Assembly (NCBI GenBank): GCA_001179505.1
Contig: CDMY01000223.1
Span: 1 to 64,000, forward strand
DNA length: 64,000 nucleotides
Source of the DNA: Vitrella brassicaformis CCMP3155
Taxonomy: Eukaryota > Protista > Chromerida
Direction of reading: 5' to 3'
Part shown: piece by piece, positions 12,291-55,615 of the stretch
Layout: every line of letters begins with the position of its first letter
Position numbering within the stretch: the stretch's first letter is position 1
Program-made: the position numbers and the translations under genes
Notes under the pieces: model-generated
Seen by the model: the letters and a program-made list of their open reading frames with translations, nothing else
Database searches by the model: none
What the model was told of the DNA's origin: nothing

Positions 12291-15200
12291 TCATCCATAA
12301 TGATTCTCGTGCTCACGGTACTGCTTCCTGATGACACCAGTAGGCACAGAGAGAGAGACGAGGAGGAGATGAGCATCCCTGTCTCTGTGCTGTGTGGATT
12401 GTTCCTTCTCTGCGTCATACTTCTTTTCTTCCTCGACGAGTGCCCTCTCGTACTGCCACACGGTCATGCCCTTGGCCCACTCAGGCCGCTCGTCCTCATC
12501 ATCATTCTCGTCCTCCTCGTTGCGACGACGCTTCTTCCCACCATCTGCCATGAGATCTGACGTCCACACAAACACACAGACAACGGCTCTTGGCGTGAGT
12601 GTCGTGGGTCCATCTCAAGAGTGCTCTCTGATCGCACCTCTCTTCCGCTTCTTGGAGCCGTTGCCGTCTCTGTCGAGGCTCTTGTATCCGTGGTTGATGG
12701 TCTGTCGGCATGCCGTTCTGAAGGGGAAGAAGTCGGTCAGAGACGACTGCACCAGGGGCGTCTTCGGGCCACGACTGACAACACACACAGACGGACACAG
12801 ACAAATCGGTGAGTGTCCGGTATATGGTGCTTTTGTGTGTCGCTTACACGCGTCTGAAGTACTTGGTGATCTTGGGAGTGGTCGTGGCTGCCGAGCTGGC
12901 CGTCGGCAGCGTCCTGCAGTAGCAGGCAATGAAGCGATGTTGCACTCGTCGTGTCGTGTGTGCCAGTGCATTGGATCGCTCCGAAGTATGCTGCACAGAC
13001 AATACAATACAGAAAGAGACAGACACACAGACAGACAGACACACAGACACACACACAGAGAGAGAGAGAGAGACAACAGATAGGGAGAGCATGGCAGGCA
13101 GTTCGTGTCTAGCTGTCGCCCAACCTGGCCTCTGTAAATAATTTGGAGAGGGCCTGGTGGCGAGTGGGTGTGATGGGCTTGCCGAACACCTTGTTGTATG
13201 GCAGCGGCTTGCCGCACAGATGATCGTTGATGTCCTTCTCCGTGTAGCCCTCCATGCCGTCATACTCGTCACCCTCACCGCTCTCTATCTCTACCTCCAC
13301 CCCTCTCTCCCTCAGTTGCTGCCTCTCGTTGGCCTTGCTCTCGGCGATGGCCTGCCGCTCCTCATACCACTGCTGCTCGATCTGCTCTTCGTTGTCCCAC
13401 ATGTCGACATCGAAGCGGGCGTCGCCACCCCTAATGTCCATCTGCCACAGCTGGCGGTTCCACACATAGCGACGGCTAAACGGCAACACCTGCACAATGA
13501 CGGCATCAATACAGCCGATCAAGGGGACGGAGATGGCCTTCCGTGTTGGTGTACCCACCTGTTGGTGTCGGTCTACGGGTACGGTCTGGTCGTTCGTCGT
13601 GCGATCCATCACCCCCAGCACGCTGATCTCGGAGTGCTTGGTCTGCTCGTGGCGGTTGCCGTCATCGTAGTGGGTCTCGGGGTCATCGCGGTCCCACTGC
13701 TCGTCCAGCAGACTCGCACCGCCAAACAGAATGACATCACTGGACACACAACCGAAGCCATTCATCTCTGTCTGCGTTGCGGGTGCGTAGCCGTGAATGT
13801 GTACTCACCTGCCCGTCCACACGGCAGCTGCACACGCTGCAGGGGGCGGCTCGTAGGGCTTGTAGGGCGTCTCGGGAGCGGGCCGTGGGGTCGTGCCGGC
13901 GGGTGGGGCTGTGCCACACATCTTCTGAGGCCGCGTGGCGAATGCCGGCTTGCTGAATCGGCCCGTGGTGATGTCGAAGATGAGGGTCTTCATGCCTCCG
14001 AACCTGGCTCCGAAATCAGCGTAGTTGGCGTAGGGCAAGTTGATGACGATCTTGTCACCTGCAAGTAAACACAGAGGCCCACACAAAAAAAGGCCAGCAT
14101 CTCTTACTCCGCCGGACTGCCTGCCTGCCTGCCTGCCACTGACCTGCCAGCACAGCTGTGTGGCGAGCAAAGTCGCATCGGTGGCCCTCCGCCGACGCCA
14201 AGTATGAGCGAAGTGCATCTGACGACAACACAACACGACAACCTGCGCTACGATGGCCAACACATGGACGACAGTTTGTGCTGACTGACTGACCATCAAC
14301 CAGCGGGAAAGTGCCCCTCGAGACCCACGGCAGACAGCTGAATATGATCCACCTGCAAGCAATGAAGATATATAAAGGCACTTCCATAGACGCCACGGAG
14401 GACACGCGATGCATCAGACGGATGACTCACGTCTTGCCTTCTCCGTCAAAGATGTTCAGCCGCGGTGGCGACGCGAAGCCCATCGGCATGAAACGCTCTG
14501 AAGGTCCGTACTCGCTGTCAAACTCGTCATCGTCAAAGTCAGAGTCAATCTCATGGTCCCACTCTGCAGGCACGCAATCACACACACGACGCCAGCACTG
14601 TCAATTCGATCGACATTTTGTCCTGCCTGCCTTACCCTCTCCGCCGATAATGAAGACATAGCGGTCCTTGACGAGGGTGGCCGTGTGGTTCAGACGGGCT
14701 GTCGGACGGGGGCCGCTCACATTGTCATCGCTGACACGGACACACAGACAGACAGACAGACAGACAGCCAAGATGAGAGCGGTCGTGGCGGCGAATGGGG
14801 GTGGGGGTCTCTCACCTGTTGTTGAATGACCAGGTCGCCACGTCGACGATGATCGAGGAACTCAACGCTTCGCTGGCCGAACCAGAAAACGCTGAAGGGG
14901 TCGTGCCGGTGCTGTCAGGCCCCAGCCACCGTACCCGTATGTGTTTTTGCCACCGATGATGAAGATGTAGCCATGTGGGTGAGCGGATGACCGAATGGGC
15001 ACACACGTCGACGTGAAGAAGCGACTGTAGCCACAGACGCAGGAAGGAGTGAGTCGGCGGACATATCAAGATGCAGCCTGGACACACACACTCCATCTAT
15101 CCACTTCGGCTTACCGATTCAGTGGCGGTGTGCTCTTCTTCTCCTCGCCCCTCAGCTCCGCCTTGCTCAGCCACTGGTGCTGATACGTGGCACCCGCACC

Positions 15201-16272
15201 ACCCTCCTCGCGATTGATCTCCAGCACACCCCAGGGGTTGTCGGTGTCGCTGCCTCTCGGCCCACCAGCCGCAAAGTAGCGTTTTGGCCACTCAGGTTGG
15301 GTGTGTGGTGCGCGGAGGGGAGGTGCGATGTTGAGAGGTGTGAGGGTGAGGGCATCTGATGGGCGGGGAGCGACGCCATCGACGCGACACCTCTTCCACT
15401 CGTACTTGCCGCCCGACACGAGGGAGGCCAACGACACACTGGGAGGGAGGGAGGCAAAGAGCAAGAAGTCGGCATCCATAAGTGGATACGCGTGTAGCTT
15501 TCGCCTACCGCCAGAGTTTTTTGGAGAGGCGGTTCTCGCCCTTGCCTCCAACCACCCCACCTGAGGGACACACCGACACAGGGGCATCAATCAGGTGCCT
15601 GACTGACTAAGTAGGGCTTCGTCCTTCTCTCAGTGTCCTCACTTACCGAACACATACAGACTAGGGCCAGCAATGAAGATGCTCGAGCGGCTGCGCTTCA
15701 TCCCATCTCTCGGCTTGATGCACTTGGCATGGCCCCACCGCAGCTCACTCACCTCGGCGTTGGCACCGAAGTCCTCGACGACTCTGCTGCGGCGATAGGC
15801 CTCGCGGTAGTCCCCCTCGGGCAGAGGCACGTACGCGGAGGGGTTGCTGACCGACTCACGGGGGAAGTGGGCGGAACTGCTGATGAGTCGAATGTTGCCC
15901 TTGCCCCTCTTGCCGAACGAGCGATGGTACTGCAACACATTGGAATGGTTGGGCGCAGCTGTAATGGCGTGTTCGTGTGTGCCTACCTGCAGCCGCCAGA
16001 TGGCCGACGAGGGGTCGGGATCCACCAGGGCCTTCAACTCCTTACACACTGCACACACAAACCATCCACAAGATCGGCAGATCAACTCATGGACTATCTG
16101 CAGCGTGGCGTGCGGCTTCTCTCCATCATGCAGCCTCCCCCTCCCTCCTGTGTGTTGTGCTGTCCTGTGCTGCGTTTCTGTTCTGTTCACCTCTCTCGAG
16201 GATGAAGAGGTCGCGTCCGTCGACGTATGGAAGCGCATACGGGACAGCTTCGCTCAGCGACGTGGCCGCCAT
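12291..16272 (-). CDS. F-box/kelch-repeat protein with C-terminal PIP box and basic NLS-like tail (paralog 1)
   Basis: Spliced N-terminus MAATSLSEAVPYALPYVDGRDLFILER/VCKELKALVDPDPSSAIW (F-box). Kelch-like blades SSIFIAGPSLYVFGK, YIFIIGG, RLNHTATLVKDRYVFIIGG, RHTAVLAGDKIVI, AAAVWTG..VILFGG. QSSLTDFF at 12726-12749. Tail exons KKRKR/DLMADGGKKRRR... to stop at 12291. Confidence 0.82.
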
Positions 16273-16429
16273 CTTGAACACACTCCAGCGAGTACACGAT
16301 GTTTTTCGGCGACCACTGCGAGCTTGAACGCAAGAGGGGGTCGTTCTTGGGGGAGAGGCAAGATCCAGACCAGGTGGACGGACACCAACCTCCCGCCATT
16401 CCAACTATCGCAAAAACTGGGAACGAACG

Positions 16430-17780: not shown

Positions 17781-19441
17781 ATGCCCCTGGTGAAGGTGGA
17801 CAGTCCGAATGTCGAGTACAGCGGTGAGCACATCACGTCCCACTACGACTACAGCACGGTGGAGGTGCGGGAGGACAGCGGCCACAAGATCTGCACCCCT
17901 TCCACGCGGCGATTCACCATCCGCACCGAGCGGCACGTGCCCAAGACGGGCCTGCTGATGGTCGGCCTGGGCGGCAACAACGGCACCACCGTCCTTGGAG
18001 GTAGTACACCAGCACACACACGGCATGGCACGCCACGCCATGCATGTGATCTTTGACCTCTGTGTGTGTTGCGTCTTGGTTGCATTGCAGGCATTTTAGC
18101 GAACAAGTACGGTATGACATGGGAGACCAAGGAGGGCACCCAATGCGCCAACTACCTGGGCAGCCTCACCCAGTCGTCGACGGTGCGGCTGGGGACCGAC
18201 GCCCTCAAGGGGACCGACGTGTACGTGCCGATGAGCGACCTGCTGCCGATGGTGCACCCCAACGACGTGGTCGTGGGCGGCTGGGACATCAGCGGCACCA
18301 ACATGGGCGACGCCATGAGGCGTGCCAAGGTGCTCGATGTGAGCCTGCAGCTGCAGCTCTACCCCCACATGAAGGACATGGTGCCCATGCCGGGCGTCTA
18401 CTTCAAGAACTTCATCGCCAGCAACCAGGAGGCTAGGGCAGACAACGTCCTCCGCGGCACCAAGATGGAGCAGATGGAGCAGGTGCGGCAGCAGATCCGC
18501 CAATTCAGGGCCGCCACAGGGGTGGACAAGGTGATTGTGCTGTGGACGGCCAACACGGAGAGGTATGCCAGTGTCGGGCAGGGGCTCAACGACACGGCCG
18601 CCAACCTCATGGCGGCCATCGAGAGGGGCGATGACGAGATCTCCCCTTCAACCATCTACTGCGTGGTCAGTGAGTCAGCTACCCACCCTCCCCCACACAC
18701 CTCTCTGCTCTCCATGTCTGTCTGTCCATCTGTCATGCAGGCGTCGATACTGGAGGGGTGCAGCTACATCAACGGCTCGCCTCAGAACACGTTCGTGCCC
18801 GGCGTGTTGGAGCTGGCGACGCAGCACGACACCTTCATCGCCGGCGACGACTTCAAGTCTGGCCAGACCAAGATGAAGTCGGTGCTGGTGGACTTCCTGG
18901 TGTCTGCGGGCATCAAGCCCACCTCCATCGTCAGCTACAACCACCTCGGCAACAACGACGGATACAACCTCTCCAGCCCACAACAATTCAGGTGGGTGCG
19001 GCGGGAGCACCTGTCGGCATGCAAACCAAACGCCCCCATGTATGGTGTGGTGTGGTGTGGGGTATCGATGGATCGGTCAGGTCGAAGGAGATCTCCAAGA
19101 GCAACGTGGTGGACGACATGGTGGCGTCCAACCGTCTGCTGTACCAGGAGGACGAGAAGCCCGACCACTGTGTGGTCATCAAGTACATCCCCTACGTCGG
19201 CGACAGCAAGCGCGCCATGGACGAGTACACCTCCGAGATCTTCATGGGCGGCCACAACACCATCGTCATGCACAACACGTGCGAGGACTCGCTCCTCGCC
19301 GCGCCGCTCATCATCGACCTGGTCGTCCTCTGCGAGCTGGCAGAGCGCATCCGCATCATGGACCACACACACAAGACGCCAAAATACGAAAAGGTGAGGC
19401 GGCGACACGAGGGAGGGGCCCTCTGCAGCGTATGCATCCTG

Positions 19442-22001: not shown

Positions 22002-23951
22002 TCACACCTGCGCCTCCACGTCCATCATCTTTTTGTTGTGTCTCGCCTCCATCTCGGCTATCAAATCAGCAGCTGTCGGTGTGGGCCCAGCACTGGCAGT
22101 TGACGGCAGGGACAGCGAGTCCAGCACGGGGCCTCTCGTCTGACACACGGGGGGCAAATCCTGCAAATGACCTGCACAGACCCAACCCTCTCATCGCGGA
22201 CCATTCCATGCGTGTGTGTCTCCCTGGGTCTTCTTCACCCACCTGTGGCTCTCGCTACGTGTCTGTACTCCTGCGCCACTGCACACGGGCAGCACAAGAG
22301 CACCACACACGCATCCTGCACACAGTCACTCGACGGAAGGCTGTACTTCCTGGACGACAGACAGATACACACCACACCCATCGCGGGGTACCCCATTCCC
22401 CCNNNNNNNNNNNNNNNNNNNNNNNNNNNNNNNNNNNNNNNNNNNNNNNNNNNNNNNNNNNNNNNNNNNNNNNNNNNNNNNNNNNNNNNNNNNNNNNNNN
22501 NNNNNNNNNNNNNNNNNNNNNNNNNNNNNNNNNNNNNNNNNNNNNNNNNNNNNNNNNNNNNNNNNNNNNNNNNNNNNNNNNNNNNNNNNNNNNNNNNNNN
22601 NNNNNNNNNNNNNNNNNNNNNNNNNNNNNNNNNNNNNNNNNNNNNNNNNNNNNNNNNNNNNNNNNNNNNNNNNNNNNNNNNNNNNNNNNNNNNNNNNNNN
22701 NNCCCCCCCCCCCCCCACACAACACACAGGTGTGTACCTTCGAATGCGGAGCCTGAAATACCACATGGCCGCCAGAAACACCACGGCCGTCAGCACCGTG
22801 CCCACTTCAAATAACAGGAATATCCAGTCGTCCCGATACCGATGCAGCTCCCCCAGCAGTACCGGGGGACTCCTGTCTCTGATCTTCATCTTCCTGGCCC
22901 ACTCGGGCAGCTTCGCCATCTCTTCCGTGACGTCGGCCCCCTCTGCAGTAGCGACCCTCAGCTGCAGGTATTTCTCGAGCGTCTTATACTGACCACCAAC
23001 CATATATGGCGAGAGACACACAATGGGGAAGAGAAAGGAGTCTTGGTGCTTGTGCCGGTGTGTTTGGTGGCTGGCTGCATACTTACGTGCCAGAGGATGT
23101 AGACTCGCTGCGTGTCTTGGAGGGCCGCCTCCAGCGGCCCGCCCGAGTGCACCTTGACAACATCAATGCTGTTGTCCTGACAGACAGGGAGACAGACAGA
23201 CAGACACTGTCTGCCTACAACCAAAGCTAAGCAGCCCGGCCCTGGCCTGTCTACTTAACCATGAGGAATGCGTTGAGGTTGGGGTATTTGGTGGTGTTGT
23301 AGACCACCTGTCCGACACCCACCGCCCACTGTGCGGCATACAGCCCCACGAACAGCATGCAGCCAAGGCCGATGTTCAGGAGCTTGGCGCGGTGTAGAGT
23401 GATAACCTTGATGACCCAGCCGCCACACGGCATCAACAGAATCAACAGAAACACCACAAGACAGCTCGTGAGGTCGCGCAGACACCTGTGTCAGTGACAC
23501 CAATGGCATGCATCGCAGCCGAGGAACAGTGCGTCGATGTCTGTTTGTCTGTGTGTCTGTCTCCTGTGCTGTCTGTGCTGTCTGTCTGTCTCACCCGAAG
23601 AGGGAGTCTGACCACCGGCCGGACCACGCCTGCACATCGCCTTCAAAGTGGTAACCACACGACGGGCACGCTGCATTATATCGCAGTCATGCGAAGGCAC
23701 ACACACGTGAGTGCCATGGATGCCGTTTGCAATGGACACCGGTGCGATGGTTGATGAAGGGAGGCTGTTGCACAGCAGCATGCTCACCTGGGCCCGCGTT
23801 GAGGACTCTGGCGCTCTGCATTGATTGGGCCTACAATCCTCCAGCCTTGCCTCCAGCTCTGCCGATCTGCGAGCTTATAACCATTCGAAGGAAGATGTGG
23901 GGATCGCAACCTTTGGCATCGTTGCGTGTGGCCCAAGGGTGATGCGTTCAT
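22002..23951 (-). CDS. PLAC8-family Cys-rich membrane protein with a large insertion; 5' end approximate
   Basis: Spliced AWSGRWSDSLFG/CLRDLTSCLVVFLLILLMPC (N-half of PLAC8), and WYFRLRIRR/KYSLPSSDCVQDACVVLLCCPCAVAQEYRHV (C-half with CCPC..QE motif). Several TM segments between. The assembly gap falls in an intron. Confidence 0.78.
22403..22701. other. Assembly gap (299 N) flanked by poly-C tracts
   Basis: Run of N. C-homopolymer on both sides. The PLAC8 reading frame continues across it (RIRR|KYSL), so it probably lies within one intron. Confidence 0.97.
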
Positions 23952-35541: not shown

Positions 35542-38500
35542 ATGGCGGCTACACCGCAGCACCTGTATGACGTCATGTGGTACTCATCCGCTTTCCTCGA
35601 CCTGCCCGAACTCCTCAAGCTCGAGACAGGTGATCCCCACGAGCAAAGCAGCAAGGAGGAGGGTGGTGCACGGTGGAGAAAGGCCAGGAGGGCACACTGC
35701 TGAAGGCCCATGAATTGATCTGCCGCTCTTGTGGATGGTTTGTGTGCCGGGCAGTTTGCAAGCAGATCAGAGCCCTGCTGCACCCCAAGAACTCATCAGG
35801 CGTCTGGCAGCTACAGGTACCTGTGGCTGCACACGCGAGCACGGGCGCCTTGTACAGCCCCACACACATCCGTCCTTCGTTGATGCGTCCGTCCGTCTTT
35901 GTCTGTGAGGGCAGTATCGGCGCTCCTTCGGCAAGAAGACCAACATCAGACTCATCCAAGGCAGCGCCCACCACCCCCGCCCCTCACCGACAGCCGCAAA
36001 CGCTTCCAAGTACACCCCTCTGCCTGAGGAATCCTACCGCGGTGCCCTTCGTCGAGGCACAGCGCTCAAGAACTTCGCTGTCAACCCATCTTTGGGTGAG
36101 CTGCGGTGGGGCCAGGCCAAGTGTGTGAATCCGAGGGATGAGATGAAGCGCAGCCGATCGAGCATCTTCGTCCTGCGCGGATATCTGTATGTGTTCGGTA
36201 AGTGCGGTAAGTAACCAACCACCATGCCTTATTCCCTTTTGCCGTACTGGCTGGCTGGCTTGTTTGTTACTGACTGCTATGGATCGTTTGTTTGTCTGTT
36301 TGGTCAACTATTAAATCAGGTGGTGTGGTTGGCGGCAGAGATGAGCACAAGAGCTACAAAACCGACCTATGGCGGTAAGTATGGGTACATGAAACACGCA
36401 ATCACAGGCACTCACTATCTTTCTACCCATGCCTTGATTGACAGTTTGTCGTTGCTGTCCCTGCTCTGCACCGGCAAGTACAAGTGGCAGCAGTGTGTGG
36501 TCGACGGCACCCCGCCCGCATCGTCCGACTCCCTCACCCTCACATCCATCAACCTCGAATCGCCCCTCCCAACGCACACCGCCCGGCCACCGTGGCCACG
36601 ACGCTTCTTTGCAGTGGGCGGGCCGACCGGCCCTCGTGATATGCGAGACAGGGACGACCTCTGGGGTGTGTTGGAGATCGATCGCAAGACCGGTGGAGAT
36701 GAGCACGGTGGCAGCGTGCTGCAGTATCGGTGGTTGAGCAAGCGAGAGCTGCAGGAGGGCCAGCAGGAGGTCACCAAAAAACGACGAGTCTCTGCGCTCC
36801 ATCGGTGGGCGAAAGGACGCAGAGAGCGGGAGAGAACGAAAGTGCGTCTGTGTTGGTTGATTGCAGTCGCTTCTTCACGGAGAACTTTCGACGCCACTTC
36901 ACGTGTACGTTTGTGCCCATCCGGTCGTTGGCACACCCCAAGGGCTACATCTTCATCTTCGGCGGCAAAAGCAACACGACTGAGTGGGGCAGAGCAGCCA
37001 GTTGACCGACATAACGACGCATGCTATTCCCGTGTTGTCTGCTCCTCAGCGAAGCGTTGGATTCCTCGATCATCGTCGACGTGGCGACCTGGTCGTTCGA
37101 CGACAAGTGAGAGCCTTCCATTCCCATTCCCCGCCACGACCACTCTCATATTGTCTGTCTGCCTGTCTGTCCGTGTCAGCGACGAGTAAGAAGCTCTCCC
37201 ATTCGCCACCACAGCTGACCTTTGTCACCTTGTCTGTCTGTCTGTCTGTCTGTGCGTGTCAGGGATCATGAGTTGTTCGACCTCCACCCGACAGCCCGTC
37301 TGAACCACACGGCCACCCTCGTCAAAGACCGCTATGTCTTCATTATCGGCGGAGAAGGCAAGCTCAACCAATAGATGTGGTGTGTTCTCGTGCCAGCTGG
37401 AGTCAGACAGCGCCCCTTTTGGTTGTATACATGTATGGTGCAGAGTGGCACCTCGGGGACGGTGAGGATTTTTGGAACGGCGAGCCGCGTTTCGTACCTG
37501 CCCGTTTCGTGCAGCCTCCAAGGCTGGACATATTCGACGGAAATACCAAAAAGTTCGCCTCACCACATCGCTGGTTATGACACTGCCTCTTTGCCGTGCT
37601 GTGTGTGACAGGTGGATTCGATTCGATCGCCTCCCATGGACTGCCCGCGGCACCAACCCGAGTGTCGATGGTCAGTGACACTACCGGCTCACACGCAGAT
37701 GCAATACACCTGATTTTCTTCTGGTCAGCGGCTGTCGGGCCCTACCTGCGGGGTGTGGACAAACGGCATCTCGAGCACCGATGTGACTTCGCCCGCCACA
37801 CAGCTGTGCTGGCAGGTCAGTGGCAGGCAGGCAGGCAGGCAGGCTGGCGGAGTAGGAGAGGCTGGCACTTTTGTGTGTGTGGGCCTCTGTGTTGACTTGC
37901 AGGTGACAAGATCGTCATCAACTTGCCCTACGCCCACCACGAGGAGGCCGACCTCGGAGTGTTGGGGGGCCTCAAGACCATCACCTTCGACACCAAGACT
38001 GGCCGATTCAGCAAGCCGGCATTCGCCACACGGCCTCAGAAGATGTCCGCCACAGCCCCACCCCCCGGCACGACCCCGCATCCGACGCCAAGCCGCCCCT
38101 ACAAGCCCTACGAGCCGCCGCCTGCAGCGTGTGCAGCTGCCGTGTGGACGGGCAGGTGGGTGGGTGCTGTATGCTGTATGCAAAGACGGACATGGTGACA
38201 CTCCCGTCCATCCATGTCTTCGTTGGTTGCAGTGAGTTGATTCTGTACGGCGGTGGGAGTCTGCTGGATGAGGCGTGGAGGAAGGGCGACTTCGACCTAG
38301 AGTACGACAACGACGCCCGGCATGACCAGAAGAAGCACTCCGAGGTCAGTGTGCTGGGCGTGATGGATCGCAAAAGGACCAAAGACCAGATTGTACCCGT
38401 AGATCGATGCCAGGAGGAGGTACAGACACACAGGAGAGCATCTCCATCCCCTCGATCGGCTGCGTCGTTGTGCATTCATGTGTGCAGGTGTTGCCGTTCA

Positions 38501-39336
38501 GCCGTCGCTATGTGTGGAACCGCCAGCTGTGGCAGATGGACACGAGCGGAGATGATGCTCGCTTCGATGTCGACATGTGGGATGACGAAGAGCAGATCGA
38601 GCAGCAGTGGTATGAGGAGCGGCAGGCCATCGCCGAGAGCAAAGCCAAGGAGAGGCAGCAGCTGAGGGAGAGGGGGGTGGAGGTAGAGATAGAGAGCGGT
38701 GAGGGTGACGAGTGTGACGACATGGAGGGCTACACGTAGGAGGACATCAACGATCATCTGTGGGGCAAGCCACTGCCATACAACAAGGTCTTCGGCAAAC
38801 CCATCACACCCACGCGCCACCAGGCCCTCCCCAAATTCTTCACTGTTACGGGGTAGGGCGAGAAGAAAAAAGACGCCGTCTGTCTAGCTCTCGGTGTGTC
38901 ATGCATGTGTGTGTGTGTGTAGTGTATTGTCTGTGCAGCATACTTCGCAGCGACCCCATGCACTGGTGCCCACGACACGTCCACATCGAGCCAACAGGAG
39001 ACAAGACGCCCATCATTGTCTGCTTGCTGCCCCTCTTCTCCACTGCAGGACGCTGCCGAAGGATGACTCGCGGGCCAACGCCACACAGACCAAAATCACC
39101 ACATTCTTCCCGCCACCGTAGGGGCCAACCACACACCCAGACAGGCAGCTCACAGAGATCCATCCATCCATGCCTGTCTGTCTGTCTGTCTGTCTGGGTG
39201 CCTCGCCTCGTTCAGCCGTGTGAAGCCGCTTCTGGTGCAGTTATCGCTGACGGCGTTCTTCCCCCTGACGTCGGCGTGCCGCCAGACCATCAACTACGGA
39301 TACAGAGGCACCAAGAGAAAGAGATCCGATCGATGA
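35542..39336 (+). pseudogene. F-box/kelch/PIP-box paralog 2 with in-frame TAG (pseudogene or truncated allele)
   Basis: MAATPQHLYDVMWYSSAFLDLPELLKLET/VCKQIRALL (F-box); kelch blades as in paralogs 1 and 3; MEGYT-TAG-EDINDHL at 38737-38739 where the paralogs read MEGYTEK; downstream QLSLTAFF (39238-39261) and KRKR intact. Confidence 0.72.
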
Positions 39337-46683: not shown

Positions 46684-48940
46684 ATGCCCTTTGTCGAGGC
46701 CATCTTCGCTGTCGGCGCCGCCTTGGCCACCAAAGCGGCAGTGACGGCCGGTGGGGCCACGGCTGTCACGACGGCAGGCAGCGCTGTCACGGCGGCACCG
46801 GGGCTGGGGCTCATGTGCTTCGAGATGGCCACCATCTTCGTCGCCGGTGTGGTGACCATCCTGTGGCCAAAGGAGGAGACGACAGCCGCCAGTGAGCTCG
46901 CCATTGTCGGCCGCCCCTCTCTCTCGTCACCACAACCGCCCCGCCAGCCGCATCAGGGCCAACAAGGCGCGCATCACGGCCATCTACCCTCTATCAGGGT
47001 GAGAAGGAAGGGAAAGAGACGTCCGATGGGCCAAAATGAAAAGATCTGTATCGCATGGCGTTGAATTCATGATTGATCTCTCTCTTTCTGGTGTGTCTGT
47101 GCCTTCAGAATCTGCTGGTCAGCTCCCCTCCAAGCCAGATCGCCCGGGCGACCTTCGTCGTCATCGTCGTCATCGCCAGCGGCCGTTCCACACTCGGCCA
47201 CGGGCGACTGGTTTGGAGAATCATGCTGTCGGGGGCCGGCAGACTCCTGCTGCTGCTGAAGCAGCGGATGGCAGGGCAGGGGGAGACACGGTCCGTCATC
47301 GACATGACGGATGAGGCCGGACGACAAGCAGCTCGCCAGGTACACAAAGGCGTGATACGGGAGTGAGAAAGACGTGTATACGAGCTGTGTGTTGTGGTGG
47401 ATGGATTGATGGATTGCTGTAGATGCTGGCCCACCTGCATGCCATCCGTGCCGCCTCTGCTGCTACTGCTGCTGCTGCCCAGCCTGCTGAAGCTGCTGGA
47501 GAGCGCCGACGTGCCCTCCCTTCTGGGTACGAGACGATGTCGACGGTAAGCAACCAATGAGACGGATTCAGGCCTTTCAATCGATATCTTCGTGTCTGTG
47601 TGTAGGCTGAGACGTTCGGCGAGCGGAGCCCGGCGGCAGCATGTGCTATCTCCCCCACACCAGTAAGCAACCAACCAAGCAAAGAGAAAAATGCCTCCGT
47701 TGTGCCTCATCTTATTCTCATTGCTTTCCTTTTTATTCAGGCCCTCTGCATGTCCGCCAGTGCCCGCCCAGCCTTCAGCCTGCGCCCCGACGTGCTGCAC
47801 CGCCCCCTGCACCGCTTCTTCGACACCGCGGCACTGCGGGCATCTCTGCCCTCCGTGGTCCAGCCCAACTGGGCGACCACGCCAACAGAGGCCATCTTCG
47901 GCCGTGCGCTGTCGCTGAAGACCGGCAGCTGCGGGCGTGTGGCCCGTTGCAAGGAGCACTCACCGGGTATGGAGGACGTGTTCTTTGCGGACGCGTCCAC
48001 CAGCTCGGTGGCCATGTTCGACGGCGTCGGTGGGTTCTTCATTACCTACGGCGTCTCGTCATGGTTCGTCGCCAAGTCTTTGGCGACGGAGTGCTCCCTG
48101 GAGGCCCAGGCCGTCACCGCCAACGGGAGGGGGGTCTTCTATGGCGGGGAGGGCCTTCCCCGAAACCGGGCGGAGGCCATCATTCTGGGCGGCTGGCAGC
48201 TGGCGTCTCGCTGCGGGCGTGTGGGCGGCACAACGGCAGTTGTGGTGGCGCTGAGTGAGGAGGCGGAAGGGTCCATCTGCGCTAACATCCCCAACTTTGG
48301 CGACTCGGGCGCTATGGTGCTCCGTCGCCCCTCATCTCGGCAAGGGCTTGTGGAGATCCACCGGACGGCCCCTATGGTGGATCCCACCGAGCCCAACCGC
48401 CCCCTGGCCATGCTCCCACTGGCCACCAGCAGCAACGGCACGCCCACCCCCACCCCAACAGCTGACCAGCTGAAGACGCAGCAGACCATCAGCGTCGCCA
48501 GCGTGCCCGTCCGAGACAAGGACTGCATCGTGGTCTTCTCGGACGGGCTGAGCGACAACCTCTCCCCCACCACCATCGCACAAGTGCTGTCTCCCTTCGG
48601 CCCCACCAAGGACGCCAACGCGGCTGCCACGGCGCTGGTCGATGCTGCTGCCCGCGCAGCACACGACCCCAACAGCCGCACTCCCCATGGGGAGAGCAGA
48701 GGGCGGTCCGGAGGCAAGGACGACGATATCAGTGCATGTGTGGGGTGGGTGGTTGTCGATTACCCCTTCCTGCAGCAGAGGGAGAGGGGCGACGAGATGG
48801 GGGGAGATGAGCCGGTGGGTGAGGGGAGTGAGGCTGCAGACAGTGGGGGAGAGAGGGATGGGAATGGTGAGGGTGAGGGTGAGGGTGAGGGTCAGTCGAG
48901 GAGGCAGCGGTGGGCGGACATGTGTGAGGAGGGTGTGTGA
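46684..48940 (+). CDS. PTC7-type PP2C protein phosphatase with long hydrophobic N-terminal extension
   Basis: Catalytic exon 47741-48940: MEDVFF, AMFDGVGG, GGTTAVV, NFGDSG, VFSDGLSDNL, GGKDDDIS. Upstream exons 46684-46999, 47109-47339, 47423-47545, 47607-47662 join in phase 0, but that linkage is less certain than the catalytic domain. Confidence 0.8.
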
Positions 48941-49231
48941 GATTAGGACAGGTGGGCGGATTTCTCGGTGACTGACTGACTAATTGCACTTCGTGTGCGT
49001 CAGTCAGTGTGCATTTGTGGACTGACTGCATTTGTTTGTGTCGTGAGGGTCAGCCAACTCATAATAACCGTTCATTGGATCAATCCCATGTGCACATGAC
49101 ATGCATCACTGCATAAGAGTCAGCCACACAGATGCAGATGGATGAAGCAGCCCCGCCCATCTGTGTGAGTATGCACATGGCCATCCATCCATCCATCCAT
49201 CCACCGACACACAGTCAGTCATCCCCCACCC

Positions 49232-52003
49232 TTATCTGATCTGTGGCCCCATGCCCCATGAATCGACCACATCAGTCTCGCGGTCCTCAACCACCTGCTG
49301 CAGAGGCTTCGGCAGCGTCATGTACAGCTGCGCCGAATGCCTGCATGTCACACCACACACACATGACGCATCACACGACACAACACACATGTGATAGGTG
49401 TGAGTTCCTCCGTCTGTCTGTCTGTCAGGCTGGCCCTTCCTCACTCACCGTTTGGCAAAGTAGATGAGTAGGGCGATGGCTTCGAAGAGGTTGCGGTTGC
49501 CCGGGGCGAGGGGCCAGGGCCGCGTGGTGGTTACCACCTCATAGCGGAGGGCGGGCAATGGGAAGCCCACCTGGTCCTCCAACTGACGCATATACAACAC
49601 ACGCGACCTGCACACAACACACAACACAAGCAAGGAGCGATCGTCAAGGCACATTTGTGTCCATCTCCCTCCCCTGCCTCACTCACCCAGCGCCACCCAG
49701 GCCCGTCCGTGTGAGAAACCCACTGCCATCCCCCGTCTGTGCGTATGCGCCCTCGCCACCACTCCCCCACCCCCATGTGGCCGACATGCCCGGCGGCTGC
49801 CCACTGCCAGCGGTGGCGGCCGCGGGCTGCACCGCACGCCAATTCTGACCTGAGAGAGCACCAGAGAGGCACACACAGAGGAAGATTGGATGATTCATGC
49901 ATGTGTCGGTCGGCTTGGTGTGCGTGTGGGAATGGGTGATGGAATGGGTCAACTGGCGTGTTGTGTTACCTACCTGTCGCCTGATGCACATGTGCCTGCA
50001 GGAAGTTGGTGTACGTGTTGAGCAAACGCAGCAGCACGTTCTCGAGGATGTGCGAGTCGGTGGGGTAGCTCTCAGCCTCCCGATAGTCGTGCTTGTAGTG
50101 CCTGAGAAAGAAAGAAGCTCAAGACATACAACACAAATGCATACCCCTGTTGGTGTGTAGCAGGTGCCTCCCTCGTGGGTCGCCCCACTGATTCACTCAC
50201 TTGACGAATCCATAGTCGGCGAACAGTCGCAGGCGCCGCAGCACATAGAGGCGGAGATCGGCTGGGTAGGACGGCGGGCGCAGGAACGACTCGATCACCT
50301 GACGCGTGTCCCACATATTCTGACCAGCCAGTAAGTATCAACACACACACATTCACATTGTCGGGCGTCGTCAATGGATCGTTTGTGTGTGTGTGTGTCA
50401 CCATCCATCCATCCATCCATCTCCCATCTCACTGACCTTGAGCTGAACAGCCTCGAGATGGTTGAGGAGGTGTGGGGGCAGGCTCTTGCTCTGGATTGGC
50501 ACGAGATTGGGGTCCGTCAGGCTGCCCGAGGCCCCGTCATAGTGCACGGACAGAGACTGCAGGCAGTGGGCAGACAGACAGGGAGTGGGGAGTGTATTCG
50601 CCCGCGAGCAGACTGTAGTTGGTTCTTACTTCGTATGAAAGGCGCGCGCCGAGTTTGCTGAGTGCCGACGTGAGCATCTGGTCCGACATCTGCAGATGAG
50701 CAACGTAGCCACGCAGCCACACCTGATTGAACGACACCATCACACACACACACATACAGATGGATGATGACACACACGACGACATCTTTCTCACCCACCC
50801 CGCCCCCCCACACACCTGCAGCCACTCCTGCAATTTACTGAGCCACTGGTCCATGACGGCCCTCCCCCCAACATGCTGGTAGGTCGACTCCCAGGGCGAC
50901 TCACCATCCCTCGCCCTCCCCGCCGCCTGCTGGAACCCCACACCGCCCCCACCACCACCCTCTCCATGGGAGCTCTCCGCCGGCCACCGGCTCGGGCGAA
51001 AAGCATAGTCTTTGTCGCGATACGAGGGCATCGGCACCTGACTGAGGGCCTGCAGGGTCCGCTCGTATGAGGAGATGCCGCCCGCGGATGCAGACGGCTG
51101 CCGGCCGTAGGATGGCGGCATGTTCGTGAATGGGGCGCCGGGGTATGAGGGGGGCTGGGAGAATGGTGTGTAGAAGGGCTGGAAGGGCGAGTGGGGCGGC
51201 CTGCCGACGGGGGGGTGGTGTGTGAATGGGCTATAGAAGGGCTGGTAGGGTGAGTAGGGGCTGGTGCCGAAAGGTCCGGGCTGCGAGTAGGCCGCCGCCA
51301 CGGGGGGAGGCGTAACTGAACAAGGCAAACAACGCACACAGAAAGCCAGACAGACAGACAGACAGACAGACAGATGGATGGATGGAAGGGGCATTGCACT
51401 GCAGGCATGCACACCCGCAACACACATACATGCAGACCCTCCCGTCCGTCCACTCCACTCACCACTGAAGCGATCACCGACGAGGTCATACAGCTCTCCA
51501 GGCCGGACAGTGATGGGCTCACGCGCAGCCATGCCCGCCTGACTGGCATACGCCGGCTGTGCGGCGGCTGCAGCTGTCTCACGCTGCTTCACCGCCTCAC
51601 TCTCGGCCGCAGCCCGGTCCTCCCGCCATCTGGACAGAAACTGCCCCGCGGACACCAGGAGGGTGAAGACCACCACACCGCCGAGGGGGACTGACCACCC
51701 GGCATGGTAGAGAAAGGCTATGATCAGCCGAATGCAGGCCAGGAGCAGCTGAATGCTCCACTTGGCGAGTGTCGCATTGCCGGCGAGGAGCAGGACGACA
51801 GCAGCGATAAAGGTGAGAAGGTTGGGGATAGATGGCAGCAGCCGCTTGACGGATGCGCGCTCCTCGGTCTTCCTCTGCTGCCGTGCTTGAGCCTCTTGGG
51901 AAGTGAAGATGCGGAGGGGCGATGGCGGCTTGGTCTGTGCCGAGAAAGACGGCGTCACGTAAGGGCTACAGTATAATGCGCGAGGAGGCGGAGTAGTGCT
52001 CAT
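49232..52003 (-). CDS. TMEM209/Pom34-like nuclear-envelope membrane protein
   Basis: Two N-terminal TM segments (NLLTFIAAVVLLLAG; WSVPLGGVVVFTLLVSA), Ser/Pro/Tyr-rich middle, then MDQWLSKLQEWL, YVLRRLRLFADYG, PTDSHILENVL, LAPGNRNLFEAIALLIYFAK. These match recalled TMEM209 C-terminal motifs (YVFERIKEL, PTDSAII, KGRNNMFHTLLMFL). Confidence 0.72.
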
Positions 52004-52103
52004 GTCGTCTGAGCTCCACAACCACGACTTGCGTTCAAGCTCGCAGTGATCGCCGAACCATATCGCGAAAAATCGTGCATTCGCTGCGGAGAGTGTGTTT
52101 AAG

Positions 52104-55100
52104 ATGGCGGCCACGTCGCTGAGTTCGGTTGTCCCGTATGCGCTTCCATACGTCGACGGACGCGACCTCTTCATCCTCGATACAGGTGAACAGAACAGAA
52201 ACGCAGCACAGGACAGCACACCACACAGGAGGGAGAGGGAGGCTGTATGATGGAGAGAAGCCGCACACCACGCCGCAGATATTCCATGAATTGATCTGCC
52301 GCTCTTGTGGATGGTTTGTGTGTGTGCCAGTGTGTAAGGACTTGAAGGCCCTGGTGGATCCCGATCCCTCGTCGGCCATCTGGCGGCTGCAGGTAGGCAC
52401 ACACGGACACGCCATTACAGCTGCGCCCACCGATCCCAATGTGTTGCAGTATCATCGCTCGTTCGGCAAGAGGGGCAAGGGCAACGTTCGCCTCATCAGC
52501 AGTTCCGCCCACTTCCCCCGTGAGTCGGTCCGCAACCCCTCCGCGTACGTGCCTCTGCCCGAGGGGGACTACCGCAGGGCCTATCGCCGCAGCAGAGTCG
52601 TCGAGGACTTCGGTGCCAACGCCGAGGTGAGTCAGCTGCGGTGGGGCCAGGCCAAGTGCGTGAAGCCAAGGAACTCGATGAAGCGTAGCCGCTCGAGCAT
52701 CTTCATTGCTGGCCCTAGTTTGTATGTGTTCGGTAAGTGAGGACAGTGAGAGAAGGAGGAAGCCCGAGTCAGGCACCTGATTGATGCCCCTGTGTCGGTG
52801 TGCAGGTGGGGTGGTCGGCGGCAAACGCGAGAAACCCAGCTTCAAGACCGACCTCTGGCGGTAGCTGAAAACCACATACACTTATAGATCCCGAGCGCTT
52901 GCTCTTTGCCTCCCTCCCTCAGTGTGTCGTTGGCCTCCCTCGTGCCGGGCGGCAAGTACGAGTGGCAGAGGTGTCACGTCGATGGCGTCGCTCCCCGCCC
53001 ATCAGATGCCCTCATCCTCATCCCCGTCAACATCGCCCCTCCTCCCCTCAACGCACCCCCCACCCAACCCGAGTGGCCGAAGCGCTACTTTGTGGCTGGT
53101 GGGCGGAGCGGCAGCGACACCGACAGCCTCTGGGGAGTGCTGGAGATCAATCGCGAGGAGGGTGTCGATAGTGCAAAGTATCGACACCAGTGGCTGAGCA
53201 AGAGCGAGCTGAGAGGCGCGGAGAAGAAGAGCACACCGCCACTCAATCGGTAAGCCAAGTGAGAGAGAGAGAGAGACAGAGAGATAGCCCATGCTGCATA
53301 TCTGCCGACTCACTCCTTCCTGTGTCTGTGGTTGGCTGCAGTCGCTACTTCACGTGTACGTTTGTGCCCATTCGGTCGTCGGCTCACCCCAAGGGCTACA
53401 TCTTCATCTTCGGCGGCATGGACAGCACAACCGGGTAGGGCACTTGGGGCCTGACAGCACCCACACGACCCCTTCAGTGTTTTCTGGTTCGGTCAGCGAA
53501 GCGTTGAATTCCTCGATCATCGTCGACGTGGCGACCTGATCATTCAACGACAAGTGAGAGACCCCCAACCCCATTCGCCGCCACGACCGCTCTCATCTTG
53601 TATGTCTGCCTGTCTGCCTGTGTGTCCGTGTCAGCGATGGCAATGTGGGCGGCCTTCGCCCGACAGCCCGTCTGAACCACACGGCCACTCTCGTCAAGGA
53701 CCGCTATGTCTTCATTATCGGCGGAGAGGGTAAGGCAGGCAGGACAAAATGTCGATCACACTGGCCATGCTGGCGTCGTGTGTGTGATTGCGTGCCTGCA
53801 GAGTGGGACCATGAGATTGACTCTGACTTTGACGAGAGCGATGACGAGTTTGACAGCGGGTACGGACCTTCACAGCACTTCGACCCGGTGGGCTTCGTGT
53901 CGCCACCGCGGCTGAGCATCTTTGACGGAGAAAGCAAGACGTGAGTGATCCGTCTGATGCATCGCGTGTCCGCCGTGACGTGCAGGGGAATGCCTGTACG
54001 TATTTTCCTGTCCTGCAGGTGGATCGAATTAAGCCGTCTGCCGTGGGTCGCAATGGGCACTTTCCCGCTGGTTGACGGTCAGTCAGTCAGCACAGACAGC
54101 CATCCGTGTGTTGGCCATCGTAGCGCAGGTTGTCGTGTTGTGTTGTCGTCAGATGCACTTCGCTCATACTTGGCGTCGGTGGAGGGCCACCGGTGCGACT
54201 TTGCTCGCCACACAGCTGTGCTGGCAGGTCAGTGGCAGGCAGGCAGTCCGGCGGAGTAAGAGAGGCTGGCACTTTTGTGTGTGTGGGCCTCTGTGTTTGC
54301 ATGCAGGTGACAAGATCGTCATCATGGTGCCCTACGCCAACTACGGGGGGGTCGGTCGCTACGGAGGCATGAAGACCCTCACCTTCGACATCACCACGGG
54401 CCGATTCAGCAAGCCGGCATTCGCCACACGGCCTCAGAAGATGTCCACCGCACCCCCACCCCCCGGGATGACCCCGCATCCTACGCCAAGCCGCTCCTAC
54501 AAGCCCTACGAGCCGCCGCCAGCAGCGTGTGCAGCTGCCGTGTGGACGGGCAGGTGAGTACACATTCACGACCACGTACACTCAGCGCAGGCAACGATGA
54601 ATGGCTTCGGTTGTGTGTTCAGTGAGTTGATTCTGTACGGCGGCGCGAGTCTGCTGGACGAGGAGTGGGACGAAGGTGACCCCGAGACCCACTACGATGA
54701 GGACGATTACCGCCACGACCAGACCAAGCACTCCGAGATCAGCGTGCTGGGGGTCATGGATCGCGCGACGAACGACCAGACCGTACCCGTAGACCGACAC
54801 CAACAGGTGGGTACACCAACACGGAAGGCCATCTCCGTCCCCTCGATCGGCTCCATTGATGCCGTGGCTGTGCAGGTGATGCCGTTTAGCCGTCGCTATG
54901 TGTGGAACCGGCAGCTGTGGCAGATGGACGTCATCCCGCCCTCCAGATGGGACGACCATGACCTGATCGAGAAGCGGTGGTATGAGGGGCGGCAGCGGGC
55001 CAGGGGCGCCAGGGCCGCGGAGAGAGAGCAACTGAGGCAGAGGGGCGTCGAGATCGAGTGTGACGGTGATGAGTATGACGGCATGGAGGGCTACACGGAG

Positions 55101-55615
55101 AAAGAGATCGACGATCATTTGGCCGGCAAGCCGCTGCCGTGCAACAAGGTGTTCGGCAAGCCCATCACACCCACTCGCCACCAGGCCCTCTCCAAATTCT
55201 TTCCTGTGACCGGGTACGCCACTGTCTAGCCATCTGACATGCCCGCTCTGTCTGTCTGTCTGTGTATCTGTCGTGCAGTATCCTTCACAGCGATCCAGTG
55301 CATTGGTACGTAAGACCAACGAGGCGCAGACGAAGGGTCCAGACCGATTCACTGCTCGTCTCTGCAGGACGCTGCCGACGGGCAACTCGAGAGCTGTGAC
55401 CACTCCCAAGATCACCAAATACTTCAAGCGCGTGTGAGCGACACTCAAAGCGTCGCACACGGCACCAACACCGGGACACTCTCACCGGTTGGTTGTGTCT
55501 GTGTCTGTGTGTCAGTCGTGGCCCCAAGCCGCCTCTGGTGCAGTCGTCTCTGACCGACTTCTTCCCCTTCAGAACGGCATGCCGACAGACCATCAACCAC
55601 GGATACAGGAGCTAG
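52104..55615 (+). CDS. F-box/kelch-repeat protein with C-terminal PIP box (paralog 3)
   Basis: MAATSLSSVVPYALPYVDGRDLFILDT/VCKDLKALVDPDPSSAIW; kelch blades YIFIFGG, RLNHTATLVKDRYVFIIGG, RHTAVLAGDKIVI, WTG/SELILYGG; QSSLTDFF at 55541-55564; ends GYRS* with no basic tail. Exons and many introns are close to the reverse complement of 12700-16300. Confidence 0.82.

What the first reader, a model, noticed from the sequence alone, without database searches (positions are those of the whole stretch)
12291..55615. Family of F-box + kelch proteins carrying a C-terminal PCNA-interacting PIP box (three paralogs)
Seen: three dispersed genes (12291-16272 minus, 35542-39336 plus, 52104-55615 plus) share an N-terminal F-box, about five recognisable kelch blades, an acidic/charged coil and a terminal exon encoding QSSLTDFF, QLSLTAFF or QSSLTDFF. 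Established: Qxx[LIM]xxFF is the canonical PIP box, and TD at positions 5-6 raises PCNA affinity as in p21/Cdt1; F-box+kelch proteins are SCF substrate adaptors. The Q, L and FF positions are kept even in the most diverged copy, and paralogs 1 and 2 add KRKR-type NLS motifs. Inference: an SCF E3 adaptor tethered directly to the replication clamp, i.e. a replication- or repair-coupled ubiquitination module. I do not know this architecture from model eukaryotes.
Basis: partly seen in the sequence, partly recalled or inferred. Interest (0 to 1): 0.82.

Follow-up and report, generated by a model that had tools for sequence, protein, structure and literature searches.

The report
Kelch F-box-like genes with PIP-box tails
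Three copies of a gene family found only in the alga Vitrella brassicaformis encode kelch-propeller, F-box-like proteins whose tails carry up to three motifs resembling docking sites for the DNA replication clamp PCNA. Clamp binding is untested, and two of the three copies carry premature stop codons.

Summary
The three paralogs exist at the stated coordinates. The window is Vitrella brassicaformis CCMP3155, not human. A 16-exon model with GT-AG splice sites at nearly every junction fits all three copies. For copy 1 it equals the public protein P0005 over 758 residues. Pfam confirms the kelch repeats above threshold. The F-box is only sub-threshold, though the weak hits are consistent.

QSSLTDFF, QLSLTAFF and QSSLTDFF are in frame. 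Two further PIP-like motifs lie upstream of them in every copy: [H/L]QA[L/I/M]xxFF and xxx[I/T]Tx[F/Y]F.

Caveats:
- Copy 3 has an in-frame TGA in a kelch exon.
- Copy 2 has an in-frame TAG 26 codons before the first motif, and an independent transcript also ends there.
- In copy 1 the motif lies about 85 residues from the C-terminus, so it is not terminal.

The family has 8 loci, all in Vitrella. Seven of 8 keep at least one canonical PIP box, and all such motifs fall in the tail. dN/dS is 0.45-0.64.

Best reading: a lineage-specific, partly decaying family of probable SCF receptors that dock on PCNA. This is analogous to Cdt2 (CRL4 receptor with a C-terminal PIP box) and FBH1 (F-box protein with a PIP box). 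Neither Skp1 nor PCNA binding was tested. It is a new variant of a known kind, of moderate interest.

The parts
12291..16272 (-). Copy 1 (public protein P0005, 827 aa). It is the only copy in the window with an uninterrupted reading frame.
   Evidence: My 16-exon model equals P0005 over 758 residues. The ATG is at 16272 and the stop at 12291-12293.
15987..16272 (-). Copy 1 exons 1-2 (16191-16272, 15987-16048), encoding the F-box-like N-terminus.
   Evidence: Pfam F-box-like E=0.097 and F-box E=0.18, both sub-threshold. A family profile's best PDB hit is the FBXW11 F-box, E=0.04. UniRef names P0005 'F-box domain-containing protein'.
13559..15929 (-). Copy 1 exons 3-13, encoding the kelch propeller (about six GG/W blades) with an acidic insert.
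   Evidence: In family members, Kelch_6 scores 33 bits (cut-off 25.3), Kelch_4 30-33 bits (cut-off 21.6) and PF24681 63 bits (cut-off 50).
13136..13159 (-). Copy 1 motif 1, HQALSKLF. This copy has LF where the others have FF.
12856..12879 (-). Copy 1 motif 2, TPKITKYF (PIP-like, without Q).
12726..12749 (-). Copy 1 motif 3, QSSLTDFF (canonical PIP consensus). It is residues 734-741 of 827.
12639..12653 (-). Copy 1 KKRKR basic cluster. A second cluster, KKRRR, lies in the next exon.
35542..39336 (+). Copy 2. It has the same 16-exon structure, and no public protein model was found for it.
   Evidence: It is absent.
38737..38739 (+). Copy 2 in-frame TAG in exon 14, 26 codons before motif 1.
   Evidence: The MMETSP transcript ORF P0001 ends at the same ...CDDMEGYT.
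38818..38841 (+). Copy 2 motif 1, HQALPKFF.
39086..39109 (+). Copy 2 motif 2, QTKITTFF (canonical PIP consensus).
39238..39261 (+). Copy 2 motif 3, QLSLTAFF. TKRKRSDR-stop follows at 39310-39336.
52104..55615 (+). Copy 3 (public protein P0003, 743 aa, annotated with exon 7 skipped).
53537..53539 (+). Copy 3 in-frame TGA in the 57-nt kelch exon 7 (53497-53553). Copies 1 and 2 have TGG here.
   Evidence: The exon is included in the mRNA of another paralog.
55179..55202 (+). Copy 3 motif 1, HQALSKFF.
55280..55306 (+). Copy 3 mini-exon, ILHSDPVHW. It is present in P0003 and most paralogs. Copy 1 has no GT donor at the position aligned to the copy 3 mini-exon donor, and P0005 skips the mini-exon.
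55402..55425 (+). Copy 3 motif 2, TPKITKYF.
55541..55564 (+). Copy 3 motif 3, QSSLTDFF. The stop follows 16 codons later.
22403..22702 (.). Assembly gap flanked by poly-C. It lies outside all three genes.

Best explanation
These are three members of an eight-locus gene family found only in Vitrella brassicaformis. Each gene encodes four parts in order:
- a short F-box-like N-terminus;
- a kelch beta-propeller of about six blades, with an acidic insert;
- a charged helix;
- a basic, proline/threonine-rich tail carrying up to three PIP-like motifs, followed by a KRKR-type basic cluster.

Proposed mechanism (inferred, not shown):
1. The N-terminus binds Skp1, so the protein serves as an SCF (CRL1) substrate receptor.
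2. The basic cluster takes it into the nucleus.
3. One or more tail motifs insert into the hydrophobic pocket of DNA-loaded PCNA.
4. The kelch propeller then presents a substrate for ubiquitination on chromatin during replication or repair.

The design parallels Cdt2 in CRL4.

The family is turning over. In this window only copy 1 is intact. Copy 2 is truncated before the tail. Copy 3 needs exon skipping to keep its frame.
For: - One 16-exon model fits all three copies, with GT-AG at nearly every junction, and equals P0005 for copy 1.
- A spliced RNA-seq contig of another paralog joins the three motif exons in one frame.
- Kelch repeats score above Pfam cut-offs.
- For the N-terminus, F-box families are the best Pfam hit in 4 of 5 members, though sub-threshold. 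The family profile's top PDB hit is the FBXW11 F-box, aligned in register on the LD..L...VCKEW core.
- In motif 3, Q, L and FF are invariant while the other positions vary (QSSLTDFF, QLSLTAFF, QSSLTAFF, QSSLGGFF).
- Motifs 1 and 2 are present in 8 of 8 loci. Seven of 8 loci keep at least one strict Q..[LIM]..[FY][FY] match.
- All such motifs lie in the tail and none in the other ~680 residues. Chance gives 1.5% per protein.
- Tail dN/dS is 0.27-0.37 in the older comparisons, below the 0.45-0.46 gene-wide average for those same pairs.
- A cullin-RING receptor with a beta-propeller and a C-terminal PIP box is an experimentally shown design: Cdt2, PMC6312923.
Against: - No binding was tested.
- The F-box match is below every curated threshold, and one member (P0003) gives no hit at all.
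- The structure models were too poor to use: pLDDT 34.6 and 57.5, with no Foldseek hits.
- Motif 3 is removed by a 36-nt in-frame deletion in two loci and is degenerate in a third.
- Motif 1 has Q at position 2, not position 1. Motif 2 lacks Q in half the loci.
- Conservation after motif 3 (ACRQTINHGY) extends beyond a simple PIP box, which could mean a different partner.
- Two of the three window copies and the L005 locus have broken frames.
- Overall dN/dS is 0.45-0.64.
- No orthologue was found outside Vitrella.
Confidence: 0.45

Rival explanations
1. The tail motifs are short linear motifs for another partner, not PCNA. Candidates are an Mlh1-type site (MIP box, R-S-K-[Y/F]-F), a Rev1-type FF site, or a Vitrella-specific partner. 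The match to the PIP consensus would then be a look-alike.
For: - Motif 1 reads [L/I]SKFF in 5 of 8 loci (LSKLF in copy 1). This fits the S-K-F-F core of the MIP box as I recall it from the literature; that is a recollection, not a test.
- Its invariant Q-A sits one residue out of PIP register.
- The block ACRQTINHGY after motif 3 is as conserved as the motif itself.
- PIP, RIR and MIP motifs are known to overlap (my own knowledge).
Against: - Motif 3 and, in four loci, motif 2 fit the strict PIP consensus, with variation confined to the non-contact positions.
- FF is followed by proline in motif 3 and sometimes in motif 1. That disfavours the helix a Rev1-type site needs (inference).
- A following basic cluster is typical of PIP-box tails such as those of FEN1 and p21 (my own knowledge).
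Confidence: 0.25
2. The motif is a PIP degron. On this view the proteins are not ligase adaptors working on PCNA. They are substrates destroyed on PCNA by CRL4-Cdt2 in S phase, as FBH1 is.
For: - Copies 1 and 3 have T-D at positions 5-6 (QSSLTDFF), and LTDFFPFR resembles the Set8/Cdt1 degron context (my own knowledge).
- FBH1, an F-box protein, is regulated in exactly this way (PMC3711418).
Against: - The basic residue required at +4 is absent: +3 is R and +4 is T.
- TD is replaced by TA or GG in copy 2, P0007 and the L005 paralog.
- It was not checked whether Vitrella has Cdt2.
Confidence: 0.1
3. The family is largely non-functional. On this view it is a recently amplified, decaying set of gene copies. 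The motifs are inherited by descent and gene conversion rather than kept by selection.
For: - Three of eight loci have premature stops or broken frames.
- Copies 1 and 3 are 88.5% identical in exons and 85.5% in introns, with dN/dS 0.64.
- Mismatches show no clear codon periodicity.
- There is evidence of exchange between paralogs. An identical 36-nt deletion is shared by non-sister loci. dS drops locally between copies 1 and 2.
Against: - Five loci keep long open frames across 16 or more exons at 41-76% protein identity.
- dN/dS is below 1 everywhere and lowest in the tail for the older comparisons.
- The genes are transcribed and correctly spliced.
- Motif 1 and its NKVFG flank are the best-conserved part of the tail, even in the most diverged member.
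Confidence: 0.2

Closest known systems
Cdt2 (DTL), substrate receptor of CRL4-Cdt2
   Same: It is a cullin-RING substrate receptor built on a beta-propeller. A PIP box near its C-terminus docks the ligase directly on PCNA. The consensus used there, [KMQ]xx[ILMV]xx[FY][FY], also covers some non-Q PIP boxes, though not TPKITKYF, whose first residue is T (PMC6312923).
   Different: Cdt2 has a WD40 propeller and joins CUL4 through DDB1. The Vitrella proteins have a kelch propeller and an F-box-like N-terminus, implying CUL1/Skp1. They carry up to three motifs rather than one. No sequence homology was detected.
FBH1 (F-box DNA helicase 1)
   Same: It is an F-box protein that binds PCNA through PCNA-interaction motifs and acts at replication forks (PMC3711418).
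   Different: The body of FBH1 is a UvrD-type helicase, not a kelch propeller. Its PIP also acts as a degron for CRL4-Cdt2.
F-box/kelch-repeat proteins (plant FBK family, human FBXO42)
   Same: They have an N-terminal F-box followed by a kelch propeller. The precomputed family hits for the Vitrella proteins include the FBX42 beta-propeller model PF13415. The plant families also show birth-and-death evolution with many pseudogenes (my own knowledge).
   Different: I know of no PIP-box tail in these families, and the literature search found none. No close sequence relative was found outside Vitrella.
TRAIP (RING E3 with a C-terminal PIP box) and SCF-Dia2 (F-box protein tethered to the replisome)
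   Same: Both are E3 ligases held at replication forks by a dedicated docking element (my own knowledge, not checked here).
   Different: TRAIP is a RING ligase. Dia2 docks through a TPR domain on Mrc1/Ctf4, not through a PIP box on PCNA.

Membership tests
Kelch-repeat beta-propeller | Match to kelch profile HMMs above the curated threshold | tested here: met
   P0003 (copy 3): Kelch_6 33.0 bits (cut-off 25.3) and Kelch_4 30.4 bits (cut-off 21.6). P0004: PF24681 63.1 bits (cut-off 50).
Kelch-repeat beta-propeller | Closed propeller of 5-7 blades | tested here: inconclusive
   About six GG...W blade signatures can be read in the model. The AlphaFold2 model was too poor to count blades (pLDDT 34.6).
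F-box proteins (SCF substrate receptors) | Match to the F-box profiles PF00646/PF12937 above threshold | tested here: inconclusive
   Pfam scores are 12-15 bits against cut-offs of 20.5-24.3. E is 0.026-0.18 in 4 of 5 members, and P0003 gives no hit. The profile against PDB has the FBXW11 F-box as top hit, E=0.04. A 75-residue model shows three helices at pLDDT 57.5 but gives no Foldseek match. UniRef labels P0005 and P0006 as F-box.
F-box proteins (SCF substrate receptors) | Binds Skp1 | not testable with these tools
   No complex prediction or experiment is available here.
PIP-box PCNA clients | Consensus Q-x-x-[I/L/M]-x-x-[F/Y]-[F/Y] | tested here: met
   Motif 3 fits in all three window copies, and motif 2 also fits in copy 2. 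Seven of 8 family loci have at least one strict match.
PIP-box PCNA clients | Contact positions conserved among relatives while the other positions vary | tested here: met
   Positions 1, 4, 7 and 8 are invariant in the five loci that have motif 3, while 2, 5 and 6 vary. However, the motif is deleted or degenerate in 3 of 8 loci.
PIP-box PCNA clients | Motif lies in an accessible, disordered terminal region | tested here: inconclusive
   The tail is rich in P, T, K and R and has low pLDDT, but the whole model has low confidence. In copy 1 the motif is 86 residues from the C-terminus.
PIP-box PCNA clients | Direct, FF-dependent binding to PCNA | not testable with these tools
   Only single-chain structure prediction is offered.
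PIP degron (CRL4-Cdt2 substrates) | T-D at positions 5-6 plus a basic residue at +4 after the box | tested here: not met
   TD is present only in copies 1 and 3. +4 is T, with R at +3. Copy 2 and P0007 have TA.
MIP box (Mlh1 partners) | R-S-K-[Y/F]-F (consensus recalled from the literature) | tested here: inconclusive
   Motif 1 has S-K-F-F in 5 of 8 loci but L or I in place of R.
Intact protein-coding gene | Uninterrupted reading frame through all conserved exons | tested here: not met
   This is met for copy 1. It is not met for copy 2 (TAG at 38737-38739) or copy 3 (TGA at 53537-53539).

The most novel reading that the evidence does not exclude
The tail is a trivalent PCNA clamp-binder, with one motif per PCNA protomer. 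It parks a rapidly diversifying set of SCF kelch receptors on the replication clamp. The birth-and-death evolution of the family would then reflect an arms race, for example the destruction of viral or transposon replication proteins at forks. That would be a replication-coupled, innate-immunity-like ubiquitin system in a free-living relative of apicomplexan parasites.
Probability: 0.06. Interest if true: 0.8.

Novelty: new variant of a known kind. Interest (0 to 1): 0.45.

Why it matters
If the tail binds PCNA and the N-terminus binds Skp1, this would be the first kelch-type SCF receptor docked directly on the replication clamp. It would be a CRL1 counterpart of CRL4-Cdt2. That would show that tethering a cullin-RING ligase to PCNA through a PIP box arose more than once.

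Vitrella is a free-living photosynthetic relative of apicomplexan parasites. Its replication-coupled proteolysis is unstudied, so the family offers a defined, testable entry point.

The finding is limited in three ways. The family is confined to one species. It is partly decaying. Every functional step is inferred from sequence motifs.

Tried and rejected
- **Pfam on single-exon ORF pieces.** This gave almost nothing, because the domains are split by introns.
- **Codon-position periodicity of mismatches.** It did not reveal exons. The high dN/dS later explained why.
- **AlphaFold2 on full-length P0005 with the 9-row family alignment.** Mean pLDDT was 34.6, which is unusable.
- **AlphaFold2 on the 75-residue N-terminus.** It gave three helices at pLDDT 57.5. 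Foldseek against PDB returned no match, so the F-box fold is not confirmed structurally.
- **Word search with an exon-sized query.** It found only a chimeric MMETSP transcript ORF and a fragment. P0001 is a mosaic of copy 2, P0006 and copy 1, each segment 100% identical. It supports transcription and splicing but is not a real isoform.
- **My first model skipped the mini-exon ILHSDPVHW.** The annotation and the L006 mRNA show it is real in most paralogs, although copy 1 skips it.
- **Spliced proteins could not be submitted.** They have no reference, so I used the public proteins P0003 and P0005 instead. Copy 2 was therefore analysed only in scripts, with X at its stop.
- **Not run (search caps reached).** I did not run separate large-database searches with the kelch domain alone or the F-box alone. 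Absence of relatives is therefore shown for the C-terminal module (exhaustive HMMER) and for full-length word searches. It is not shown for remote kelch kin.
- **Considered and rejected.** TGA read as tryptophan: TGA in frame stops the copy 2 reading frame, and nothing else suggests a variant code. Human origin: P0003 and P0005 are Vitrella proteins.
Full report
**Origin of the window.** Two proteins in the public collection are identical to products of this window. Both are labelled Vitrella brassicaformis CCMP3155 (assembly GCA_001179505.1, a 162,318-bp contig). P0003 corresponds to copy 3 and P0005 to copy 1. G+C is about 59%. Introns are short and almost all GT-AG, often with (TGTC)n tracts before the acceptor.

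**The assembly gap.** The only run of N is 22403-22702. It is bounded by poly-C on both sides. It lies about 6 kb beyond the 5' end of copy 1 (16334) and 12.8 kb before copy 2 (35542). No family member crosses it, so continuity or frame across the gap has no bearing on the finding.

**Checking the observation.** blastn of copy 3 against the window finds exactly three copies:
- 12678-16334 on the minus strand, 83.7% identical over 3.7 kb;
- 35708-39305 on the plus strand, 67-81% identical in four pieces;
- copy 3 itself.

Homology starts about 76 bp before the ATG and ends at the stop codon of copy 3.

I built a 16-exon model for copy 3 by hand from the three-way alignment and projected it onto the other two copies.
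- Every junction in copies 1 and 3 is AG...GT. In copy 2 four junction dinucleotides read otherwise through the alignment (CG, GC, GA, TT).
- All three copies translate in the same frames from end to end.
- For copy 1 the model is identical to P0005 over all 758 modelled residues.

The eight-residue motifs lie where stated and are in frame with the upstream exons.

**Three corrections to the observation.**
1. Copy 3 carries TGA at 53537-53539 in the 57-nt kelch exon 7, where copies 1 and 2 have TGG. The public model P0003 avoids it by skipping the exon, which preserves the frame. The exon is included in the mRNA of another paralog.
2. Copy 2 carries TAG at 38737-38739 in exon 14, 26 codons before the first tail motif. 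An MMETSP transcript ORF (P0001) ends on the same copy-2-specific residues, so this is not an assembly error. No public protein model for copy 2 turned up.
3. In copy 1 the motif exon is not terminal. P0005 continues for 86 more residues through further exons to 12291.

**Domains.**
- Kelch is confirmed. In P0003, Kelch_6 scores 33.0 bits (cut-off 25.3) and Kelch_4 scores 30.4 bits (cut-off 21.6). In P0004, PF24681 scores 63.1 bits (cut-off 50). About six GG...W blades can be read in the sequence.
- The F-box is only probable.
  - The N-terminal 70 residues of four of five members hit Pfam F-box-like or F-box at E=0.026-0.18. That is 12-15 bits, well below the cut-offs, and P0003 gives no hit.
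  - A profile of the five N-termini has the F-box of FBXW11 as its best PDB match (E=0.04), aligned on YLD..L...VCKEW. Beta-TrCP1 appears lower in the list.
  - UniRef calls P0005 and P0006 'F-box domain-containing protein'.
  - The structure predictions did not help.

**The tail.** An alignment of the tails of all eight loci shows three PIP-like motifs, not one.

| Motif | Sequences seen | Loci with it |
|---|---|---|
| 1 | HQALSKFF, HQAISKFF, LQAITKFF, LQAMDEFF; HQALSKLF in copy 1 | 8 of 8 |
| 2 | TPKITKYF, QTKITTFF, TPMITSFF, QAEITDFL; HTKTTTFF in one locus | 8 of 8 |

- Motif 1 is preceded by an invariant KVFG.
- In motif 3, Q, L and FF are invariant and the other positions vary.
- A 36-nt in-frame deletion removes motif 3 in the loci of P0006 and P0008. 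It is degenerate in P0004.
- Those two deletion-bearing loci still have a canonical box in motif 2, so 7 of 8 loci keep at least one strict Q..[LIM]..[FY][FY] match.
- In six full-length proteins every h..[FY]F motif lies in the last ~70-110 residues, and none lies in the remaining ~680.
- Only 1.5% of shuffles of P0005 give a strict PIP match. Only 0.14% of shuffles of its tail give two relaxed motifs.
- A KRKR-type cluster follows the motif in copies 1 and 2 and in P0006 and P0007 (P0008 has KIKR). Copy 3 stops before it.

**RNA evidence.**
- L006 is a Logan assembly of run ERR558152. It matches the L005 paralog in 18 blocks, 14 at 100% and 4 at 98-99.7% identity, with the introns removed, so it is a spliced mRNA.
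- Its last ORF joins motif 1, the mini-exon, motif 2 and motif 3 in one frame. This is direct evidence that the motif exons are spliced together in a family member.
- The upstream part of that mRNA is broken into several ORFs, so that locus looks degenerate.
- P0001 confirms the exon 13/14 splice (...HQQ|VLPF...). It is, however, a chimera of copy 2, P0006 and copy 1 segments.
- I found no transcript covering the tail of copies 1-3 themselves.

**Family size and evolution.**
- An exhaustive HMMER search of 1.84 billion representatives with the C-terminal profile returned only three proteins. Two of them were confirmed as Vitrella proteins in the word searches; the third, P0004, likewise.
- Two word searches with full-length queries found only the seven annotated Vitrella members plus generic bacterial kelch proteins.
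- With unannotated copy 2 the family has eight loci on six contigs.
- dN/dS is 0.64 for copies 1 and 3, and 0.45-0.46 against copy 2. The tail is lowest in the older comparisons, at 0.27-0.37.
- For copies 1 and 3, exon identity is 88.5% and intron identity 85.5%.
- The tree groups (P0008, P0004) against the rest, with P0006 sister to P0007. Yet P0006 shares the identical 36-nt deletion with P0008.
- dS also drops locally between copies 1 and 2, to 0.22 against 0.55 overall. Both observations point to sequence exchange among paralogs.
- Three of eight loci have broken frames. This is birth-and-death evolution under weak purifying selection.

**Interpretation.** The best-supported reading (confidence 0.45) is a lineage-specific family of kelch-propeller, probably F-box, receptors whose basic tail docks on PCNA.
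- Shown: the gene structure, the kelch repeats, the motif pattern and its conservation, transcription and splicing, and the restriction to Vitrella.
- Inferred: Skp1 binding, nuclear import, PCNA binding and any ubiquitination.

Rivals, in order of confidence:
- The motifs serve another FF-binding partner such as Mlh1 or Rev1. Motif 1 contains S-K-F-F, which I recall as the core of the MIP box.
- The family is largely decaying.
- The box is a PIP degron. The required basic residue at +4 is absent and TD is not conserved.

**Comparison with what is known.**
- The literature search found no F-box/kelch protein with a PIP box and nothing on these Vitrella genes.
- The design principle is established. 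Cdt2, a beta-propeller receptor of CRL4, has a C-terminal PIP box that is necessary and sufficient for PCNA binding (PMC6312923). FBH1 is an F-box protein regulated through PCNA-interaction motifs (PMC3711418).
- The finding is therefore a new variant of a known kind rather than a new category.

**Verdict.**
- It remains untested, rests on a sub-threshold F-box, and concerns a single-species, partly decaying family.
- Interest is moderate (0.45).

Noticed in passing
window 18066-19394 (+): A long open exon encodes myo-inositol-1-phosphate synthase (Pfam NAD_binding_5 E=7.8e-97 and Inos-1-P_synth E=1e-12). It lies between copy 1 and the assembly gap.
   Followed up: no
window 47702-48937 (+): A 412-codon ORF gives a weak, sub-threshold PP2C phosphatase match (E=0.0012, 19 bits against a cut-off of 20.3).
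   Followed up: no
window 22394-22402 and 22703-22716: The assembly gap is bounded by poly-C on both sides, so a long homopolymer C tract probably caused it.
   Followed up: partly
window 13125-13489 (-) versus 38488-38852 (+): Exon 14 (the charged helix) of copies 1 and 2 is far more alike (dN 0.04, dS 0.22) than the rest of those genes (dS 0.55). This suggests gene conversion between dispersed paralogs.
   Followed up: partly
L001:6560-6790 and L002:6020-6260: An identical 36-nt in-frame deletion removes TDFFPFRTACRQ-equivalent codons in the loci of P0006 and P0008. These loci are not sisters in the protein tree, so the tail seems to have been exchanged between paralogs.
   Followed up: partly
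L006:1-3358 (Logan ERR558152) versus L005:3318-8025: This is a fully spliced 18-exon mRNA of another family member. Its reading frame is broken into five ORFs, and the public annotation splits the locus into three genes (458, 127 and 166 aa). It may be a transcribed pseudogene or may use alternative splice sites.
   Followed up: partly
P0001 (MMETSP Transcript_34582): This de novo transcript is a mosaic. Residues 21-60 and 261-287 are 100% copy 2, residues 61-180 are 100% P0006, and residues 181-260 are 100% copy 1. It is probably an assembler chimera across paralogs.
   Followed up: yes
window 55248-55275, 53602-53630, 37180-37260 and other intron 3' ends: Introns of all three copies carry (TGTC)n / (TG)n tracts just upstream of the acceptor. 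These appear to serve as the polypyrimidine tract.
   Followed up: no
window 50537-52402 (-) and other ORFs of 600 codons or more: Very long ORFs without any Pfam match overlap copy 3's 5' end on the opposite strand. They are probably spurious ORFs of G+C-rich DNA.
   Followed up: partly
L003:2006-2895 (-) and L002:117-2805 (-): The genes next to the family members on other contigs include a weak PCNP-like gene and a polyubiquitin/Rad60-SLD gene. No shared neighbourhood among the loci was evident.
   Followed up: no
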